Assembly (NCBI GenBank): GCA_053919585.1
Contig: CM132807.1
From: Euprymna scolopes
Taxonomy: Eukaryota
Direction: 5' to 3' (one strand)
Length of the DNA stretch: 64,000 nucleotides
Below are positions 723-59,495 of the stretch, in pieces (positions within the stretch are counted from its first letter, which is position 1; each line of letters starts with the position of its first letter). The position numbers and the translations under genes were made by a program. The notes beneath the pieces are model-generated. The model was not told where the DNA came from and searched no databases. It saw only the letters and a program-made list of their open reading frames with translations.

Positions 723-2061
723 TAGGCACCGCCAAAACTGGGAGGGCAGGTCAGTACTTTTTGACGGACCGTCTTTTTAAAAATCTACCAAAAATCAGGT
801 AATTATCCGATTAATACGAAATTTTCAGCGATTATTAGGAGAAGAATGAACTTTATAACGGTGTACTTATTTTTCATAAACGATATTTATATATATATAT
901 ATTTTTGCTTACAACCCCCCTTGTTTTGAAGTGGGAACAAATATGCTTAAAATAATCATCTGAAGCTGAAATCAACATATTGTGTTGTTGTAAGGGACAG
1001 AATTATAGATTCAAAAAAAAAAAAAAAAAAGTTTGCATACCTTATTTTGACGTCTGAATATCAGAACTTCGATTGTGTTTAATTATCCCGCTTTTGAGTT
1101 TTGAAGTGTGAAATTCGGTGAATATGTTAAGTAAAATAATTAATTTAAGTTAAGCAAAACAAAAAAAAAAATTTTTAATATTTATACGAAAAAAGCTATT
1201 TTAAAATTTTTGATAAATAAATTAACAATTTTTTTTTAGCGAGCCGAATAATGCATGACCATTATTAAACAGGGCATGCTTTGAATAATCGATACCAAAA
1301 AAAAAAATCGATAAATATTGTGCCCTTTGTGTTAAAAATAGCATCATTTTTTTCGATCCCGTTTGAAAACGTTTGCCGCCTTTCGACTACGGTGGACCAA
1401 ACGCACTGAAATAATTTTTTTTTATTCTGCTTTAAATTGCCCCCCCCATTTTGGGGAGCCTGGCCCCCACACACATACACATTAAAAACCAAACGTATAC
1501 AAATGGTCACCCATCTGGTACTGGCCAGCCTCAGCTTAATAATACATTGAAATTTTCGTCACTGAAAAATAAGTTTTTTTTGGCCTGTTTGGTCTTCCAT
1601 AGTTTTCTTATCATCAGACGAAAACGTAAACAGAGTCGATCTGAACTCTACGTCAACGCGAAATATCTGGTTACCTATATGAATAAGTGGAATTATTTGA
1701 AATTCAGGTACTTATATTATAATATTTTTGCATATTCTCTTAGAAAATCATCCTAAATCTTAGTTAGACCATAAATAAATTAATTAATTATTTCAAAAAC
1801 CCTTTTTTAAAAATATTTAAGTACGTTTTTTGTGCAAGACAAAAAATGTCAATTGTTAACTTTTTGGGAAAATTTAACATTTAAAATTGAATTAAAAATA
1901 GTAGAAAAAGTTTTACATTATTCTGTTTTCTATATGATAAAATTCAGGGTTTTATCTTTCTGGAAAAAAAAGTTACTCAGAAATAATGGATTTTAATAAA
2001 TGTAATTTCGTTTTAAAAAACAACAACAACTTGATTTTGCGGCCATTTTTGGCGGTGCCTA
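723..2061. mobile_element. Non-autonomous hAT DNA transposon (MITE-like, 1339 bp)
   Basis: Perfect 15-bp TIRs TAGGCACCGCCAAAA / TTTTGGCGGTGCCTA, flanked by the identical 8-bp TSD ATATTGCG (715-722 and 2062-2069). No transposase ORF inside. Confidence 0.9.
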
Positions 2062-6050: not shown

Positions 6051-6929
6051 GACTTGTGTGNNNNNNNNNNNNNNNNNNNNNNNNNNNNNNNNNNNNNNNN
6101 NNNNNNNNNNNNNNNNNNNNNNNNNNNNNNNNNNNNNNNNNNNNNNNNNNNNNNNNNNNNNNNNNNNNNNNNNNNNNNNNNNNNNNNNNNNNNNNNNNNN
6201 NNNNNNNNNNNGAACCTACGAAAATTATATTAAGTGGAAATTATATCCGTGTAACGCTAAAATAATAAAAATAAAACAAAATATATTCCATATGTATAAT
6301 ATTTCCTTCCAATATCTGTGTTTGTCTTATCCATATTTTTTTAAATGTGTACTTATACTATTTGTTTTGAATGTAAATTGATGCGCAATACGCGCTTCGA
6401 TTGCCTCATTACATTTAAGATTACTCAAACCTAATTCTGTATGGACAATACACTCTTATATATATTTATAATGTTTAAGAGAATGCAAGATTAAATCCGA
6501 CGCTTTGGGTTTACGCATACAGAAGAGAAATAATTGTCAAGAATTGTAAACAAGAAAGTAATTATGTATATTATTGAAATTAGTGTACTAATCTTGTATT
6601 TATTTTCATAATGTTTCAGACAATGTGAGATCCGCATGTTTTCAGGTGTATATAATTGACCTCGGGAATCTTTGTCTGAAACTGAAAAATCTGGACGGAT
6701 TTTTTAACAGAACCATTTATGGAAAATATATGCGCACCATTCTCCTATTTCGTTATACATGACCGGATTAAACTATTAAAAAACGGAAATATAGTTTAAT
6801 TGTAAGGCGCAATGAGAATTGAATCTTAAACTGTCAGAACACTGTATTTTACAGCATAACATTCATTAACTAATTTATCTTGAATACAACGGCTCCTTGG
6901 AGAAAGAGTATACATAAAAACATAACAGC

Positions 6930-7495
6930 TGCTAAACTCCTGACTGACAAACAATATGGATTCAGGCAAGCCCGTTCAACAGCAGATATCTTAACTGTAG
7001 TTCCTGAACGTATATACCGTTCATTGGATAAAACAGGGGAGGGTAGAGCGGTGGTCCTTGATATATCTAAGGCTTTTGACAGGGTATGGCACGATGGTCT
7101 TCTAAGGAAAATTAGATCATATGGAATCACTGGAAGAATTCATAATGTAATTAACTCCTTCTTAAGTAATAGAAAAATCAAAGTTGTCCTCGACGGACAT
7201 ACATCCAAACAATATGACATAAATGCGGGAGTACCTCAGGGGTCTATCCTTGGACCTCTATTATTCCTGATAGTCATAAACGACCTCCCTGATAATATTG
7301 TTTCGGAGATTGGTATATTTGCCGATGACCCCACTCTCTGTAACAGATATGAGGGGAAAACAAATGAACACATATCCACGGAAATGGCAGAAACACTAGA
7401 GGATGACCTCCAATCTGTAGTGGAATGGGGACAAAAATGGTTGGTCACATTCAATGCTGCTAAGACTAAGCTTGTTTCCTTCAATAACTACAACC
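6930..7495 (+). pseudogene. CR1/Zenon-like LINE reverse transcriptase fragment
   Basis: Within ORF 6880-7569: QYGFRQARSTAD, LDISKAFDRVWHDGLL, GVPQGSILGPLLFLIVINDL, IFADD, WLVTFNAAKT. The ORF ends are unrelated flanking sequence. Confidence 0.88.
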
Positions 7496-7499
7496 TTCT

Positions 7500-7625
7500 C
7501 TACCACCAAATTTCTGTGAAAGCACTTCGAACATCTTCCATAGTCATGTCATTCCTGATGCGGTCGTGAACCCAAACAGCAGCACTTAAGCGCTCCTCAA
7601 CAGTAAATACACTGATGTCAGTCAT
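7500..7625 (-). pseudogene. N-terminal HTH fragment of a Tc1/mariner-type transposase (DUF4817-like)
   Basis: Minus strand reads MTDISVFTVEERLSAAVWVHDRIRNDMTMEDVRSAFTE, which resembles DUF4817-type transposase N-termini. It abuts the LINE fragment. Confidence 0.5.
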
Positions 7626-8111: not shown

Positions 8112-9741
8112 CAGTGATGATCATATTTATTGGCACGGTAAAATAAAAGTTAAATTTTGTCTAATAAATTCTAAAAAAGGGATTAAATTAAAGAAAATAA
8201 CAAAGTATATTATGTATTTTTACTGGCCTTTCCGATGCAGCAATCGGATTTTAGAAAAAATAAATAACAAAGGAACAACAAACATAATTGCAAAAAACCC
8301 TTGTTCAAATTTATTGGCACGATTTATTTAATAATCGATTGTATAGCCTTTGGCCTTGATTACCTTCCTCATTCGCTTTTCATAGCTTACAACCAAGTTG
8401 TTGCACTCTTCAGTAGTAATTTTAGCCAACTCTTCCTGACAATAATCCTCCAATTGAATAAGATTATTAGGCTTCCTTTGCATTACCCTCAATTTTAATG
8501 TTCTCCATAAATTTGCAATTGGATTAAGGTCTGGGCTTTGTGATGGCCACTCCAAAACATTAATATTATTGTCCTCAAGCCATTTCTTAGTCATTTTAGC
8601 CGAATGCTTTGGGTCATTATCTTGCATGAACCACCAACGACGACCAAGTGAGAGCTCTTTAGCAGGGTCTTTCAGGTTTTCATCCAATATTTTAACATAA
8701 TCTTCCTTTTTTATGCTACCTGTGACCTTAACAAGTCGCCCTGGTCCAGAGGCAGCAAAGGATCCCCAAAACATCAAACTGCCTCCACCGTGCTTCACTG
8801 TGGGTATGGTGTTCTTAGGCAGGAAAGCTTCGCCAGATTTTCTGTAAATATAAGACACTTTATTATGGCCAAATAACTCTATTTTCGTTTCGTCTGTCCA
8901 TAGAACACGTTTCCAGAATGCAACATCTTTATCAATATGACGTTTTGCAAAGGCTAGCCTTGCTTTCAGGTGCATAGGATTCAATAAGGGAGTCTTTCTC
9001 GGACGACATGCTTTTAAACGAGCTCTCTTCAAAACTCTACCAACTGTATGTCGAGATACATTCACTCCAGAGGTGCTCTGTTCATCAACAATCTCCCCAA
9101 CAGAGATCCTTGGGTTTTGTTTTACTTGTCGAACAATTTTCCGTTCATCTCTTGGGGAAAGAATCCTTTTTCTCCCTCTACCCTCTAAACCCATAACGTG
9201 GCCTTGCGATTTGAACTTGTTTATTATGGCTCTAACAGTGGATTTGGGAAGGTTTAGCTTCTTTGAAATCTTATCATAGCCCTCCCCATTGGTATGGCAT
9301 GCTAGAACAAGCTTCCTGACGTCTTCGCTGTGTTCCTTAGTTTTAACCATGGCGATTGAAAATTATAATTTAGTCACTTATAATAGTTTAAATAAATCGC
9401 TATCTAAAAATTATATGAAAAAAATTATTCACTGAATTAGCGTTAAACAAGCATAATATGGCTATAAAAAAGTTCAGAAAGCACGTAAACCGGAAATTGA
9501 TTGATATTATACTGATACTAAAAGAAAAACAAAGCCGTGCCAATAATTTTGAACAAGGGTTTTTTGCAATTATGTTTGTTGTTCCTTTGTTATTTATTTT
9601 TTCTAAAATCCGATTGCTGCATCGGAAAGGCCAGTTAAAAATACATAATATACTTTGTTATTTTCTTTAATTTAATCCCTTTTTTAGAATTTATTAGACA
9701 AAATTTAACTTTTATTTTACCGTGCCAATAAATATGATCAT

Positions 9742-48756: not shown

Positions 48757-49791
48757 AACGGGGGTTAGAACAGTAGTCAAAAGAGCAGAATGTATTTTAA
48801 TGTGATAGCACAATTACTAATTTAATTAAAATACACGAGAAAAACGTGCTCGTTGTAATTTATTATAAGCTCGATAGGCAGACATCCTAGAGTTACTTTT
48901 ATATTTAGTAATATTAAGTAATATTTAGTAATATTTAGTAATGTGATTGATAATTTAAAATTCACATTAGAGTTAAAAAATAAAAATCTGTATGATAAGA
49001 AGGAACAACAATAAAGTAAATAATTTGTACGATCGTTTCGCAAACGATGTTTTTATTGTGATAGATATCAAGCCACGGACAATAATTTTGACATATGGTG
49101 TTTTTTAAACAAAATCTCCTCATCAGCACAAGTATTGGGTGTTTTTATATATAAAAGACTCCATAAATACACCTAGCAATTTAAAAGTAAGGCAGATGTA
49201 TCTGGAAAAAATTAACATAAAGAGGAAAATATTTATTTGATAAGAAAAGTAATATGAATTGAAAAGAAAAAAATAGAATACAATTATAAATCTGAATTTG
49301 GTTTAAATATAAGGTCATAANNNNNNNNNNNNNNNNNNNNNNNNNNNNNNNNNNNNNNNNNNNNNNNNNNNNNNNNNNNNNNNNNNNNNNNNNNNNNNNN
49401 NNNNNNNNNNNNNNNNNNNNNNNNNNNNNNNNNNNNNNNNNNNNNNNNNNNNNNNNNNNNNNNNNNNNNAATTTTATCGTATTAAGGCGTAAATATATAA
49501 TTTTAAAAAATATTATTTTGCACCAACCTAATATCGTGCAGTTAGGTGTTTCTCGTTCGGAACACACTCTTAACGATGTAATTTGAATTTATATTTTTAA
49601 TCTATATCTAATATGTAAAGTCGGTCTGCTGTTGGAAATTATACCGTGCCCAATATAAAGTAATTGCTTATAATGTTAAAAAAAAGATTAGGTGTTGTAA
49701 CTGAAACCAAGATATTCAACTGTGAAATGAACTTACTTCGTCCCGACAAGGGACGCTGTCATCTGTGTTGGTTGAGAGACATTGTTGTGTG

Positions 49792-49863
49792 CGGCCGTTT
49801 GCTCAGTTAGTAGAGTACTTGGCTCGCATGCAAGAGGCTCGGGTTTCGAATCCTGAGTTCGGA
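49792..49863 (+). pseudogene. tRNA-Ala(CGC)-derived Pol III head, copy 1
   Basis: A box GCTCAGTTAGTAGAG, anticodon loop with CGC, B box GGTTTCGAATCC. Confidence 0.7.
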
Positions 49864-49916
49864 TGTGTCTTACCAATGAGCCCAAATTAGGGCAAAATTC
49901 GAGTTTGGACTTCCGG
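49859..49916 (+). ncRNA. Degenerate type I hammerhead ribozyme, copy 1
   Basis: CCAATGA (for CTGATGA), stem II GCCC-AAATTA-GGGC, AAAAT (for GAAAC), TCGA, GT; stem I GTCT pairs with GGAC and CGGA with TCCG. Confidence 0.6.
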
Positions 49917-50030
49917 TTCGGTGACTGTCCTGACTCTTGTGGGCTGCGACGCTGTTGCCTGTGGAATTTATTATATATAATCACTCATATTCTGATAGGC
50001 CTATCCTAAGTTACTCGCTCGGTTAGCATG

Positions 50031-50094
50031 ACTGAAGTTAAAACTCCTACTTGTGAGACATCGGCTTGGGGTAATTAGTTGGTTGGATGACCGC
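50031..50094 (+). pseudogene. 5S rRNA-derived internal control region segment
   Basis: ACTGAAGTTAA resembles 5S box A (ACCGAAGTTAAG). CATCGGCTTGGGGTAATTAGTTGGTTGGATGACCGC resembles 5S CGTCGGGCGCGGTTAGTACTTGGATGGGTGACCGC (IE and box C). A short insertion separates the two. Confidence 0.6.
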
Positions 50095-50165
50095 GTCCAT
50101 TGTCGAGACGAAGTAGGTTCATTTCACATTTGCTTGGTCTTTGTTGGTTAATAGAAATTCTTGTG

Positions 50166-50239
50166 TTCGGGCGTGTGCTCAGTTGGTAGAGTACTTGCCT
50201 CGCATGCAAGAGGCTGGGGTTTCTACTCCTGAGTTCGGA
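50166..50239 (+). pseudogene. tRNA-Ala(CGC)-derived Pol III head, copy 2
   Basis: A box GCTCAGTTGGTAGAG; anticodon arm CTTGC-CTCGCAT-GCAAG (5-bp stem, 7-nt loop, CGC); decayed B box. Confidence 0.7.
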
Positions 50240-50292
50240 TGTGTCTAACTGATGAGGACAAATGAGGCCGTAACTCGAGTCTTGGATTCCGG
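50235..50292 (+). ncRNA. Type I hammerhead ribozyme, copy 2 (one core substitution)
   Basis: GTCTAA-CTGATGA(50249-55)-GGAC AAATGA GGCC-GTAAC(for GAAAC)-TCGA-GTC|TTGGAT TCCGG. Predicted cleavage after 50281. Confidence 0.72.
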
Positions 50293-50371
50293 TTCATTTA
50301 CCGTCATGGCTCTTGTGGGCTGCGAGGTTGTTTGCCTGTGGAATTTATTATATATAATGTCTCCCATTCTG

Positions 50372-50425
<54 letters not shown>

Positions 50426-50492
50426 CGAAAATGCGCAAATACGTCTGCTTCTTTGTGTTTTTGGTTTGTTTACAATGATATATATATATATA

Positions 50493-50547
<55 letters not shown>

Positions 50548-50714
50548 CGATTAACTACACAGAATATTCCGCGTTTTGTGTAGCGTAATCGACGTATCTA
50601 TTTTATAACTTACTACCTTGCTCTACCTACGTATTGAGCACTGTCGAAATAAATACTTAAAGTTTACTTATAAATTTATACTACGTATATTAATTTATGT
50701 GATTACATGATGGG

Positions 50715-50790
<76 letters not shown>

Positions 50791-50794
<4 letters not shown>

Positions 50795-51240
50795 GTGTCC
50801 CAGAATACCCGCATTATGTCGATTTTTTTAATCCATATAAATACATATGAATATCAATTTTATTATTAATAATCATAATAGATGCTAAAATTATTGACCC
50901 TCTGCGTTGATACAGTCACTTTATGCATGAAATTTATGAAGCTTAATAATACGATATGCTGATGATGTGCTATTTTAAGCTCCTCGCTCATTTTTCATGA
51001 TGATTTTACGGGGGCTTCTAGCAACATTCTCTAAAACAATTGTTGGTGTTTCTTCATCAGTTTCATTCTTTCGTCGACCACACCTCTAACAGTTAGCAAC
51101 TGACCCATTTTCTTGGTAAAGGTTAATTAAACCTCAGACCGTGATATGGACCAATAGTCTTTCTCGCTGGTGATGAGTGCGGTAGAATTCTTCAGCTACA
51201 GAGGGGTATGTAACCTCATTTCTTCCGAACATAAAAATCA
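50791..51240. mobile_element. Tc1/mariner terminal fragment
   Basis: (TA)n followed by a CAGAGTGTCCCAGAA terminus typical of Tc1-like TIRs. The other end is lost in the N-gap. Confidence 0.4.
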
Positions 51241-58528: not shown

Positions 58529-58672
58529 AACAAAGATGGCGGTGAAGAAGCAGTGCAGTCCCGATACTGAGTTTGAAATAATTGCCTGTAACAAATATGG
58601 CGTCGAAGAATCGGTGCAGTCCCGATAATGAGTGTGAAGTAATTGCCAGTAACAAAGATGGCGTCGAAGAAT
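58529..58672 (+). repeat. 61-bp tandem repeat, ~2.4 copies
   Basis: AACAAA(G/T)ATGGCG starts at 58529, 58590 and 58651. Confidence 0.85.
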
Positions 58673-59495
58673 CAAATGCCGTTCATGACGTAGACAACTG
58701 CCAACTGATTGAATCCAAAATTCGACAATTTTTATAGTAACTTTGGAAGCTTTTCATTGGTTGGTTGTTATAACTTGTGGTTATAAAAACTGTTGTATTG
58801 TTATCACAAAAAGGGCACTATTGTAAGACCGTCTAAATGTTGCTGTCTATTTGTGATAAATTCATATCTAATTGCTCATATGCAATTGTGTGTGTGACAT
58901 GTATTTTGGACATATCTTAACTTTATGCGACTATTGGTTTTATATAGCTTTTAATCACCTTGCAGGTATCGATCGCAGAAGAATGGAAATTGAATGTATT
59001 TGCTTGCTTGATGAATTCAAAGTCTTATTTTCCTACACGTCAGTACCCCCCAAGTGAAGGGAGATCGCCGACCTCTTAAGACGTCTGTTCTTATCAACAT
59101 CCACACCCAAACACACTGACTTCAGCTAACCTGATCACGTGACTCACATACAGATCCGATCAGCTGCGCCTTACTTCCAGTAAAATGTGTCTACAATATA
59201 ATTTACCATATTTCTTTCTTATGCTCATCCAATTTTCTCAACAAAACGATCGTCAAAATACTTGGTGGCATACCCCTCATTGGGAGTAAAACACATTTAA
59301 CACAGACCTTTTTTATATAATGGATTCAATTGTGTATGACTTGAGAAAAGGAAAAAAAATAAATAAAATAAAAAATAACTTAACAATAAAATAAAAAAAA
59401 TTGGGGGGGATTTGTCTTTATTCTCATTGGTTAAAAAGAATTATTAATATATGTCTATCATGTGCGCAATAAGAAGCCATTTGTTGTAAATCATA

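What the first reader, a model, noticed from the sequence alone, without database searches (positions are those of the whole stretch)
49721..50373. Chimeric tRNA-Ala / hammerhead ribozyme / 5S-derived tandem element (retrozyme-like)
Seen: two head-to-tail units 376 bp apart. Each has a tRNA-Ala(CGC)-like head with A/B boxes running directly into a type I hammerhead. The two copies are damaged at different positions, so together they reconstruct GTCTAA-CTGATGA-stem II-GAAAC-TCGA-GTC|TTGGAC. Stem II differs between copies (GCCC/GGGC versus GGAC/GGCC) with a compensatory change at its second pair. The spacer between the heads carries 5S box A/box C-like sequence. Established: tandem repeats of a few hundred bp carrying type I hammerheads (schistosome Sm-alpha, newt satellite 2, cricket pDo500, metazoan non-LTR retrozymes) give self-cleaved monomers or circular RNAs and are thought to use Penelope-like RTs. 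Inference: this is a non-coding mobile RNA combining type 2 (tRNA) and type 1 (5S) Pol III promoter parts with a ribozyme. I cannot verify whether this family has been described.
Basis: partly seen in the sequence, partly recalled or inferred. Interest (0 to 1): 0.88.

Follow-up and report, generated by a model that had tools for sequence, protein, structure and literature searches.

The report
Dead copy of hammerhead-ribozyme jumping element
This is one old, mutated insertion of a very abundant non-coding jumping element of a large mollusc genome, which pairs a tRNA-gene-type promoter with a self-cutting hammerhead RNA; the design is already known from blood flukes and animal "retrozymes", and the proposed 5S rRNA part is not supported.

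Summary
The repeat is real. Window 49711-50373 holds 1.6 head-to-tail units (spacing 376) of a dispersed family, plus a 53-nt inverted 5' piece, ending in a (TA)n microsatellite.

Intact copies elsewhere in this 5.9-Gb genome have a 412-nt unit. Each carries a tRNA-Ala-derived head (83% identical to the genome's own tRNA-Ala genes) running straight into a type I hammerhead. Its 33-nt core occurs about 9,250 times, with none in the reversed control.

Both window copies carry core mutations and are dead.

Across 72 loci, insertions nearly always end at two internal UAUA sites next to (TA)n. They are 5'-truncated, often longer than one unit, and in 33 of 72 loci have an inverted partner. This is the insertion pattern described for Penelope-like elements.

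- The 5S likeness is a marginal local match.
- The "compensatory" stem II change is private to this one decayed copy.

The closest known relatives are Schistosoma Sm-alpha and metazoan non-LTR retrozymes, so I class it as a new member of a known kind. This scan has already reported such elements many times elsewhere in this genome.

The parts
49711..49763 (-). Inverted 5' fragment of the element (unit positions 396 to 344), joined directly to position 1 of copy 1 with unit 397-412 missing. This is a 5' inversion of the twin-priming type.
   Evidence: inverted repeat I1: 47 nt, 89%; BLAST to the natural reference unit L030:1501-1912
49762..50137 (+). Copy 1: one full unit (reference positions 1-412) shortened to 376 nt by two 17-nt deletions. 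It is about 83% identical to a young natural copy.
49795..49863 (+). tRNA-Ala-derived head of copy 1 (A and B box region; anticodon position reads CGC)
   Evidence: Rfam tRNA 25.2 bits, cut-off 29; 39/52 identical to a genomic tRNA-Ala gene, z 13
49867..49910 (+). Dead hammerhead of copy 1. CUGAUGA has become CCAAUGA, the G of GAAA has become A, and the C of the GUC cleavage triplet is deleted.
   Evidence: (15.3 bits)
50034..50094 (+). The 8-mer GAAGTTAA (50034-50041) was made by a private deletion. A 25-nt stretch (50070-50094) is 76% identical to 5S nt 70-94.
50138..50373 (+). Copy 2: unit positions 1-236, 89% identical to the reference. It ends at the family's second usual 3' end site, next to (TA)n.
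50169..50237 (+). tRNA-Ala-derived head of copy 2
   Evidence: 28.7 bits, cut-off 29
50243..50287 (+). Hammerhead of copy 2. The CUGAUGA box and the GUC site are intact, but GAAA has become GUAA and stem II has one broken pair, so it is probably inactive.
   Evidence: (28.3 bits, E 1e-4, cut-off 34)
50374..50422 (.). (TA)n microsatellite flanking the 3' end, the family's usual target
   Evidence: 83 of 100 tail-site ends are followed by (TA)n

Best explanation
Window 49711-50373 is a single old, inactive insertion of a high-copy, non-coding retroelement family with a 412-nt unit.

Unit layout, in coordinates of the natural copy L030:1501-1912:
- about 30 nt of leader;
- a tRNA-Ala-derived head carrying Pol III A and B boxes (about 32-104);
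- a type I hammerhead immediately after it (106-150, cutting after 144);
- a structured body of about 260 nt.

Inferred life cycle:
1. Pol III starts at the tRNA-like head and reads through tandem units, because the sense strand has no TTTT terminator.
2. The hammerheads cut multimeric RNA into unit-length pieces. Their helix III is only 2 bp with a palindromic UCGA loop, so they pair two by two into a double hammerhead with an 8-bp helix III.
3. The pieces may be circularised.
4. A reverse transcriptase that nicks (TA)n microsatellites primes cDNA at one of two internal UAUA stretches (unit positions about 221 and 236-245). It copies back for a variable distance, often more than one unit, and often leaves a second, inverted, 5'-truncated piece. 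The enzyme is most likely one of the abundant GIY-YIG-encoding Penelope-like elements of this genome.

Shown here: the family, its anatomy, an intact ribozyme motif in most copies, the tRNA-Ala origin, the fixed 3' ends at (TA)n, the truncations and inversions, and presence in RNA libraries.

Inferred only: Pol III transcription, cleavage in vivo, circular RNA and the identity of the partner enzyme.
For: Family and copy number:
- 1,924 first-look candidates on many chromosomes, with the best at 89-91% identity to copy 2.
- the 33-nt hammerhead core with up to 2 mismatches gives 4,654 + 4,595 matches, against 0 for the reversed control.
- a body-specific 33-mer gives 2,621 matches.

Anatomy:
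- a 6.5-unit array of 412-nt units. Hammerhead_1 scores 45 bits (cut-off 34, E 3e-10) and tRNA 33.5 bits (cut-off 29).
- the head is 43/52 identical to the genome's own tRNA-Ala(UGC) genes, z 19.6.
- the homodimer of the 45-nt ribozyme folds at -31.5 kcal/mol against 2 x -11.8, as a double hammerhead with an 8-bp helix III. The canonical monomer fold is not the minimum.
- the cut monomer RNA folds with z -3.7.
- no TTTT on the sense strand of the unit (5.7 expected; 0.9% of shuffles have none).

Insertion pattern (114 pieces in 72 loci):
- 100 pieces end at unit position about 221 or 236-245, and 83 of those are followed by (TA)n.
- 37 pieces exceed one unit.
- 33 of 72 loci have a head-to-head inverted partner.
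- 6 of 114 5' ends lie within 143-149, at the ribozyme cut site (p 0.014). One (L026) is exactly at 145.

Partner and expression:
- GIY-YIG domains give 15,395 candidates, many in open frames of about 806 aa, in tandem or inverted pairs about 2.9 kb apart.
- PMC8557442 describes partial tandems, inverted 5'-truncated copies and (TA)n targets for Penelope-like elements.
- runs labelled as RNA from several studies hold the unit, including one 439-nt contig that wraps around a full unit.
Against: - Neither window copy reaches the Rfam cut-offs, and both have core mutations. Nothing at this locus is functional.
- No direct evidence for Pol III transcription, self-cleavage or circles. Read laying showed no pile-up of RNA ends at the cut site, and contigs cannot separate circles from multimers or from DNA carry-over.
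- The 5'-end cluster at the cut site is small (6 of 114). BLAST ends are accurate only to a few nt, and other clusters exist (about 34-39, 78-83, 176-196, 390-412).
- The Penelope-like partner was not linked to the element by shared sequence.
- The sample of loci is partly biased: 30 were chosen for likeness to copy 2 and 50 for a perfect ribozyme core.
Confidence: 0.85

Rival explanations
1. One reading: a three-part chimera in which the body between the ribozyme and the next tRNA head derives from 5S rRNA and supplies type 1 Pol III promoter parts (box A, box C).
For: Two stretches of the unit (257-280 and 316-372) resemble the same part of the genome's own 5S gene (nt 58-109, which includes box C). 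With permissive scoring z is 3.4 and 4 of 500 shuffles reach the score. Against real genomic windows p is about 0.01 for the first stretch and 0.07 for the second, and most of the windows that reached the score are themselves 5S-like repeats.
Against: No Rfam 5S_rRNA match at E<=10 in the window or in an intact dimer. With standard scoring p is 0.06, and BLAST E is 2.4. The p-value depends on the scoring chosen after the fact. A 5-nt insertion falls inside the box C equivalent. The box-A-like 8-mer in the window comes from a private deletion. There is no similarity to the genome's true 5S-derived repeats, which match 5S at E 1e-8 to 4e-19.
Confidence: 0.15
2. An ordinary tRNA-derived SINE moved by a LINE (for instance one with a simple-repeat tail), in which the hammerhead is a passenger with no role in mobility.
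For: 5' truncation, a tail made of a simple repeat and a tRNA-derived head are classic SINE features. L1-type twin priming can also produce 5' inversions.
Against: Insertions are circular permutations longer than one unit (37 of 114). They end at sites internal to the repeating unit. In 33 of 72 loci they carry inverted partners with their own tails. The ribozyme is kept intact in most copies. This pattern is the one described for Penelope-like elements and retrozymes (PMC8557442, PMC7229834). The known Ceph-SINEs of squids and cuttlefish have a CORE/RTE-derived body and no ribozyme (PMC5786205).
Confidence: 0.1
3. A plain satellite or local tandem duplication that grew by unequal crossing-over, with no RNA intermediate.
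For: Tandem arrays with very similar units exist (L030, 99.7% between units).
Against: Thousands of short copies are dispersed over all large contigs, with fixed 3' ends, variable 5' ends and a (TA)n target. The unit is also present in RNA libraries.
Confidence: 0.03
4. The window locus itself is an active source copy that makes a self-cleaving or circular RNA.
For: Copy 2 keeps CUGAUGA, helix III, the GUC site and helix I.
Against: Copy 2 has GUAA in place of GAAA and a broken stem II pair. Copy 1 has three core defects and has lost the cleavage-site C. The copies are 11-17% diverged from young ones. A single near-intact hammerhead with a 2-bp helix III would need a partner to cut (PMC4209133).
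Confidence: 0.02

Closest known systems
Sm-alpha / Sj-alpha SINE-like elements of Schistosoma (Ferbeyre et al. 1998; Laha et al. 2000; as summarised in PMC6765202 and PMC2770079)
   Same: A non-coding unit of a few hundred nt. A tRNA-derived Pol III promoter is followed directly by a type I hammerhead. Copies are both tandem and dispersed, in thousands. After cutting, the promoter ends up at the 3' end of the RNA piece, so multimers are needed to pass it on.
   Different: The head derives from tRNA-Ala, not tRNA-Gln. The unit is 412 nt. The host is a mollusc with a 5.9-Gb genome. Insertions target (TA)n, start from two internal UAUA sites and often carry inverted partners. Activity of the ribozyme is not tested here.
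Metazoan non-LTR retrozymes (Cervera and de la Pena 2020, PMC7229834; Li et al. 2026 preprint, 10.64898/2026.07.22.740005)
   Same: Tandem repeats of 170-400 bp with a type I hammerhead, no coding capacity, high copy number, presence in transcriptomes, and a proposed dependence on Penelope-like elements. Helix I is 6 bp, helix II 4 bp and helix III short with a palindromic loop, the canonical metazoan form (PMC4209133).
   Different: Neither paper mentions a tRNA-like or Pol III promoter module ('tRNA' occurs only in other senses and 'Pol III' not at all). Circular RNA, the defining product, was not shown here.
Penelope-like elements and their pseudo-LTR or miniature derivatives (PMC8557442, PMC4209133)
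   Same: Partial tandems, an inverted 5'-truncated copy upstream, a preference for (TA)n, and hammerheads that work as dimers.
   Different: No reading frame. The hammerhead is the canonical type with helix III rather than the minimal Penelope variant. No sequence link to a particular Penelope-like element was established.
Newt satellite 2 / axolotl retrozyme hammerheads
   Same: A weak helix III capped by a palindromic tetraloop, so cleavage is expected through a double hammerhead (PMC7229834).
   Different: Newt transcripts are reported to be made by Pol II (PMC6765202). Here a Pol III-type head precedes the ribozyme.
Ceph-SINEs of squids and cuttlefish (SepiaSINE, Sepioth-SINE, OegopSINE; PMC5786205)
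   Same: SINEs with tRNA-derived heads in cephalopod molluscs.
   Different: Their body is a CORE-like and RTE-derived domain and they depend on RTE LINEs. They have no hammerhead, no tandem units and no (TA)n targeting.
5S rRNA-derived SINEs (SINE3 type)
   Same: Only a weak local likeness of the body to 5S nt 58-109.
   Different: Those elements carry a recognisable 5S head. True 5S-derived repeats in this genome match 5S at E 1e-8 to 4e-19, while this element does not.

Membership tests
Hammerhead ribozyme type I (Rfam RF00163) | Score at or above the curated cut-off (34 bits), with the CUGAUGA and GAAA cores, a GUH cleavage site, and helices II and III closed | tested here: met
   Intact family members score 45 bits, E 3e-10. 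The window copies score 28.3 and 15.3 bits, below the cut-off, with core mutations. The family meets the test; this locus does not.
Hammerhead ribozyme type I (Rfam RF00163) | Self-cleavage at the predicted site | tested here: inconclusive
   6 of 114 insertion 5' ends fall at unit 143-149, p 0.014, one exactly at 145. No RNA-end pile-up was seen in reads. No cleavage assay is possible with these tools.
tRNA-derived SINE head (type 2 Pol III promoter) | Significant similarity to a tRNA of the host, including the A and B box regions | tested here: met
   43/52 identical to genomic tRNA-Ala(UGC), z 19.6. Rfam tRNA scores 33.5 bits over model positions 10-63. It is not a functional tRNA: ARAGORN finds none and the acceptor stem is not kept.
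tRNA-derived SINE head (type 2 Pol III promoter) | Transcription by Pol III | not testable with these tools
   Indirect only. The sense strand of the unit has no TTTT (0.9% of shuffles), and four clear 5' ends lie at 34-39, the start of the tRNA-like part.
Metazoan non-LTR retrozyme | Short non-coding tandem repeats, each with a type I hammerhead, dispersed in the genome | tested here: met
Metazoan non-LTR retrozyme | Expression as unit-length circular RNA | tested here: inconclusive
   RNA libraries hold the unit and one contig wraps a full unit. Contigs cannot tell a circle from a multimer or from DNA.
Penelope-dependent non-autonomous element | Insertion architecture of Penelope-like elements: partial tandems, an inverted 5'-truncated copy, a microsatellite target | tested here: met
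   37 pieces exceed one unit, 33 of 72 loci are head to head, and 83 of 100 tail-site ends abut (TA)n. The window copy has 1.6 units, an inverted 53-nt piece and (TA)n.
Penelope-dependent non-autonomous element | Sequence shared with an autonomous Penelope-like element of the same genome | not tested
5S rRNA-derived element | Recognisable homology to 5S rRNA, including the internal control region | tested here: not met
   No Rfam hit at E<=10. BLAST E is 2.4. Pairwise p is 0.008-0.06 depending on scoring. No match to true 5S-derived repeats.

The most novel reading that the evidence does not exclude
The weak double likeness of the element's body to 5S rRNA nt 58-109 is real ancestry. The family would then be a retrozyme built from pieces of two different Pol III genes (tRNA-Ala and 5S) around a hammerhead, a combination not described for any ribozyme-bearing retroelement.
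Probability: 0.12. Interest if true: 0.5.

Novelty: new member of a known kind. Interest (0 to 1): 0.3.

Why it matters
The Sm-alpha design, a tRNA-type promoter fused to a hammerhead, is not confined to flatworms. It has spread to thousands of copies in a large mollusc genome.

The genomic copies also record how the element moves. They show priming at internal UAUA sites in (TA)n microsatellites, products longer than one unit, inverted partners, and some 5' ends at the ribozyme cut site. Together these give a cheap, sequence-only handle on the still unproven link between animal retrozymes and Penelope-like elements, and on whether such ribozymes cut in vivo.

The papers I could search on cephalopod genomes and SINEs do not mention hammerheads, so repeat annotation of these genomes probably misfiles the family. 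The particular locus in the window has no function of its own.

Tried and rejected
- Rfam at gathering thresholds over the whole window, and ARAGORN: no hits. The window copies are too decayed; only E-value mode and intact relatives gave answers.
- 5S origin: tested five ways. These were Rfam, three pairwise scorings against the genome's own 5S gene, an empirical null from real windows, BLAST, and comparison with true 5S-derived repeats. The result is marginal at best, so I rejected it as a finding and kept it only as the low-probability novel case.
- Compensatory stem II change: a genome-wide pattern search found no exact copy with both sides changed. All 27 listed matches are within one mismatch of the common GCCC/GGGC stem. 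Rejected as evidence of selection.
- Ceph-SINE membership: rejected from the published description.
- RNA ends and circles: read laying on four runs gave coverage but no start or end peaks and no informative joints.
The sample therefore stayed at 72 loci and the Penelope partner could not be examined.
- Target-site duplication at the window insertion: none visible. The right flank is (TA)n, and the left flank reaches a masked gap 240 nt upstream.
- Tandem Repeats Finder at score 200 did not report the 376-bp pair.
- The Ferbeyre 1998 paper (PMC108972) is not held. Sm-alpha features are cited from reviews.
- I built no consensus of my own. A natural copy (L030:1501-1912) served as the reference throughout.
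Full report
**1. The observation**

Reading 49400-50800 and the repeat finder confirm two direct copies, 49762-49996 and 50138-50373, 376 bp apart and 82-90% alike. A 47-nt inverted repeat has its right arm (50086-50132) inside the repeating unit, and its left arm (49717-49763) immediately upstream of copy 1.

At curated thresholds Rfam finds nothing in the 64-kb window, and ARAGORN finds no tRNA. In E-value mode each copy gives a tRNA match (25.2 and 28.7 bits, cut-off 29). A Hammerhead_1 match follows directly (15.3 and 28.3 bits, cut-off 34; E 1e-4 for copy 2). So the motifs are there but decayed.

**2. The family**

The window belongs to a 5.9-Gb assembly of 925 contigs. A search of that genome with copy 2 gave 1,924 first-look candidates on many large contigs, with the best at 89-91% identity.

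One locus (L030) is an array of 6.5 units of 412 nt that are 99.7% alike. I used one natural unit, L030:1501-1912, as the reference throughout and built no consensus of my own. In that unit:

- Hammerhead_1 scores 45 bits (E 3e-10), above its cut-off.
- tRNA scores 33.5 bits over model positions 10-63, also above its cut-off.
- The ribozyme reads GUCUAA-CUGAUGA-GCCC(AAAUGA)GGGC-GAAA-C(UCGA)G-UC|UUGGAC.

The 33-nt ribozyme core with up to two mismatches occurs 4,654 + 4,595 times, and the reversed control gives none. A 33-mer specific to the body occurs 2,621 times with up to three mismatches. Some of the ribozyme count may belong to sister families that share the motif.

**3. The window locus mapped on the unit**

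- 49711-49763 is unit 396 to 344, inverted.
- 49762-50137 is unit 1-412 with two private 17-nt deletions, which is why the spacing is 376 rather than 412.
- 50138-50373 is unit 1-236.
- A (TA)n run follows to about 50422.

Copy 1 is about 83% and copy 2 about 89% identical to the young reference. The two copies share subfamily-diagnostic positions with copies such as L009, including the CGC at the anticodon position where the L030 array has UGC.

Both ribozymes are broken. Copy 1 has CCAAUGA for CUGAUGA, A for the G of GAAA, and has lost the C of the GUC site. Copy 2 has GUAA for GAAA and one unpaired position in stem II. Nothing at this locus should be active.

**4. The tRNA origin is solid**

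A pattern search found the genome's own tRNA-Ala genes, and ARAGORN confirmed them. The element's head is 43/52 identical to a tRNA-Ala(UGC) gene, z 19.6 against shuffles. It is a promoter relic and not a tRNA, because the acceptor stem is not kept.

**5. The 5S origin is not supported**

I fetched real 5S genes.

- With standard scoring, the best local match to the element's body is 23-25 nt, and 17 of 300 shuffles do as well.
- With permissive scoring, a 52-nt match of unit 316-372 to 5S nt 58-109 appears (z 3.4, 4 of 500 shuffles).
- A second stretch (unit 257-280) resembles the same 5S region (p about 0.07).
- Most of the real-sequence windows that scored as high turned out to be true 5S-derived repeats. 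Those match 5S by BLAST at E 1e-8 to 4e-19, whereas the element's spacer reaches only E 2.4.
- The element shows no similarity to those repeats.
- Rfam 5S_rRNA gives nothing at E<=10.
- The box-A-like GAAGTTAA in the window arose from a deletion private to copy 1.

I keep 5S ancestry as a 12-15% possibility, not a finding.

**6. The compensatory change is not meaningful**

Of the HHRs collected from the family, most read GCCC/GGGC in stem II. A few have the 5' strand changed to GGCC, GGAC, GGCG or GGUC, with the 3' strand unchanged. Genome-wide there is no exact copy with both sides changed, and all 27 matches within one mismatch keep at least one side of the common GCCC/GGGC stem. The double change in window copy 2 is therefore private to one decayed copy that also has a broken neighbouring pair and a core mutation.

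**7. How the element moves**

I mapped 114 pieces in 72 independent loci on the unit.

- 3' ends: 100 pieces end at one of two sites, about 221 (GGAAUUUAUUAUAUA) or about 236-245 (CAUUCUGA..AUAU). 83 of those run straight into (TA)n.
- 5' ends are variable.
- 37 pieces are longer than one unit, running through position 412 into position 1.
- 33 of 72 loci have an adjacent inverted, 5'-truncated partner with its own tail on the outside.

PMC8557442 describes this architecture for Penelope-like elements: partial tandems, an inverted 5'-truncated copy upstream, and (TA)n as preferred target for some clades.

The window copy fits. It has 1.6 units, its 3' end lies at 236 next to (TA)n, and its 5' inversion has a 16-nt gap, as in twin priming.

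The genome has 15,395 first-look GIY-YIG candidates. Many lie in open frames of about 806 aa, in tandem or inverted pairs about 2.9 kb apart. Abundant young Penelope-like candidates therefore exist, but I could not read them.

**8. Signs that the RNA is made and cut**

- The sense strand of the 412-nt unit is 34% T yet has no TTTT, the Pol III terminator (5.7 expected; 0.9% of shuffles have none).
- Four clear 5' ends lie at 34-39, the start of the tRNA-like part.
- Six of 114 5' ends lie at 143-149, around the cut site (p 0.014), and L026 is exactly at 145.
- The 45-nt ribozyme prefers a homodimer (-31.5 against 2 x -11.8 kcal/mol) whose predicted structure is the double hammerhead with an 8-bp helix III. 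This matches what PMC4209133 and PMC7229834 describe for animal type I hammerheads with a palindromic loop 3.
- The cut monomer is more structured than shuffles (z -3.7).
- Runs labelled as RNA from several studies, under two species labels and a mollusc metatranscriptome, hold most of the unit's 31-mers. Contigs cover the whole unit, and one of 439 nt wraps round it. Contigs cannot separate circles from multimers or from DNA, and the one raw-read run gave few reads and no end peaks.

**9. Comparison with what is known**

The nearest described design is Sm-alpha / Sj-alpha of Schistosoma. It is a tRNA-derived SINE-like unit (tRNA-Gln, per PMC2770079) that appears to be transcribed by Pol III. 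The promoter is followed by a hammerhead that frees units from multimers (PMC6765202).

The tandem, non-coding, type I hammerhead arrangement also meets the sequence definition of metazoan non-LTR retrozymes (PMC7229834). A 2026 preprint derives those from Penelope pseudo-LTRs (10.64898/2026.07.22.740005). Neither paper mentions a Pol III or tRNA-like module.

Ceph-SINEs are a different thing. A search of cephalopod genome papers listed none that mention hammerhead ribozymes.

**10. Verdict**

The 5S component and the compensatory change do not hold, and the locus itself is a dead copy.

It is a new member of a known kind. Other agents of this scan have already reported the same class many times elsewhere in this genome, and my independent tests agree with them.

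Noticed in passing
window 25254-25348 (+), 16387-16471 (+), 1500-1532 (-); also L026:2681-2790 and L028:3148-3236: Genuine 5S rRNA-derived repeats: 69-79% identical to the genome's 5S gene over 34-112 nt, E 0.017 (shortest match) down to 4e-19. The genome-wide first look for RF00001 gave about 277,000 candidates, so a large 5S-derived SINE-like population may exist. They are unrelated to the hammerhead element.
   Followed up: partly
G000, e.g. C12:14496712-14504984, C13:17111032-17117229: GIY-YIG domains in uninterrupted frames of about 806 aa, in tandem and inverted pairs about 2.9 kb apart, with 15,395 first-look candidates. This looks like an abundant, young Penelope-like element family. 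Its DNA could not be fetched.
   Followed up: partly
L083 (G000:C2:86633916-86636945): Eleven tRNA-Ala genes (AGC and UGC) in a perfect 251-bp tandem array. Further tRNA-Ala clusters lie on C36 and C39.
   Followed up: no
window 8328-9350 (-): An open 340-aa Tc1/mariner-type transposase frame (HTH_Tnp_Tc3_2, HTH_SB, DDE_3).
   Followed up: partly
window 6880-7569 (+) and 21106-21636 (-): Reverse transcriptase fragments (RVT_1, 95 and 29.5 bits). The clade was not determined.
   Followed up: no
L077:1523-2134: The junction of an inverted pair falls exactly in the palindromic CUCGAG of the hammerhead's helix III, as if the palindrome had served as the turning point.
   Followed up: no
L033:1424-1733: A copy of the element lacks unit positions 285-396 precisely. 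The window's inverted piece also ends at 396. This may mark a 112-nt module that is optional, or was added, in the 412-nt family relative to the shorter sister families.
   Followed up: no
L030:1501-1912 and 66 of 77 other copies (unit 1-221): The sense strand has no TTTT despite 34% T, while the antisense strand has one. This fits read-through by Pol III.
   Followed up: yes
window 58529-58674: A 61-bp tandem repeat, 2.4 copies, 87% matches.
   Followed up: no
loci: 5' ends also cluster at unit 176-196, giving insertions of about 1.05-1.15 units. That would fit one round on a circular template followed by a stall at the primer, but this is speculation.
   Followed up: partly
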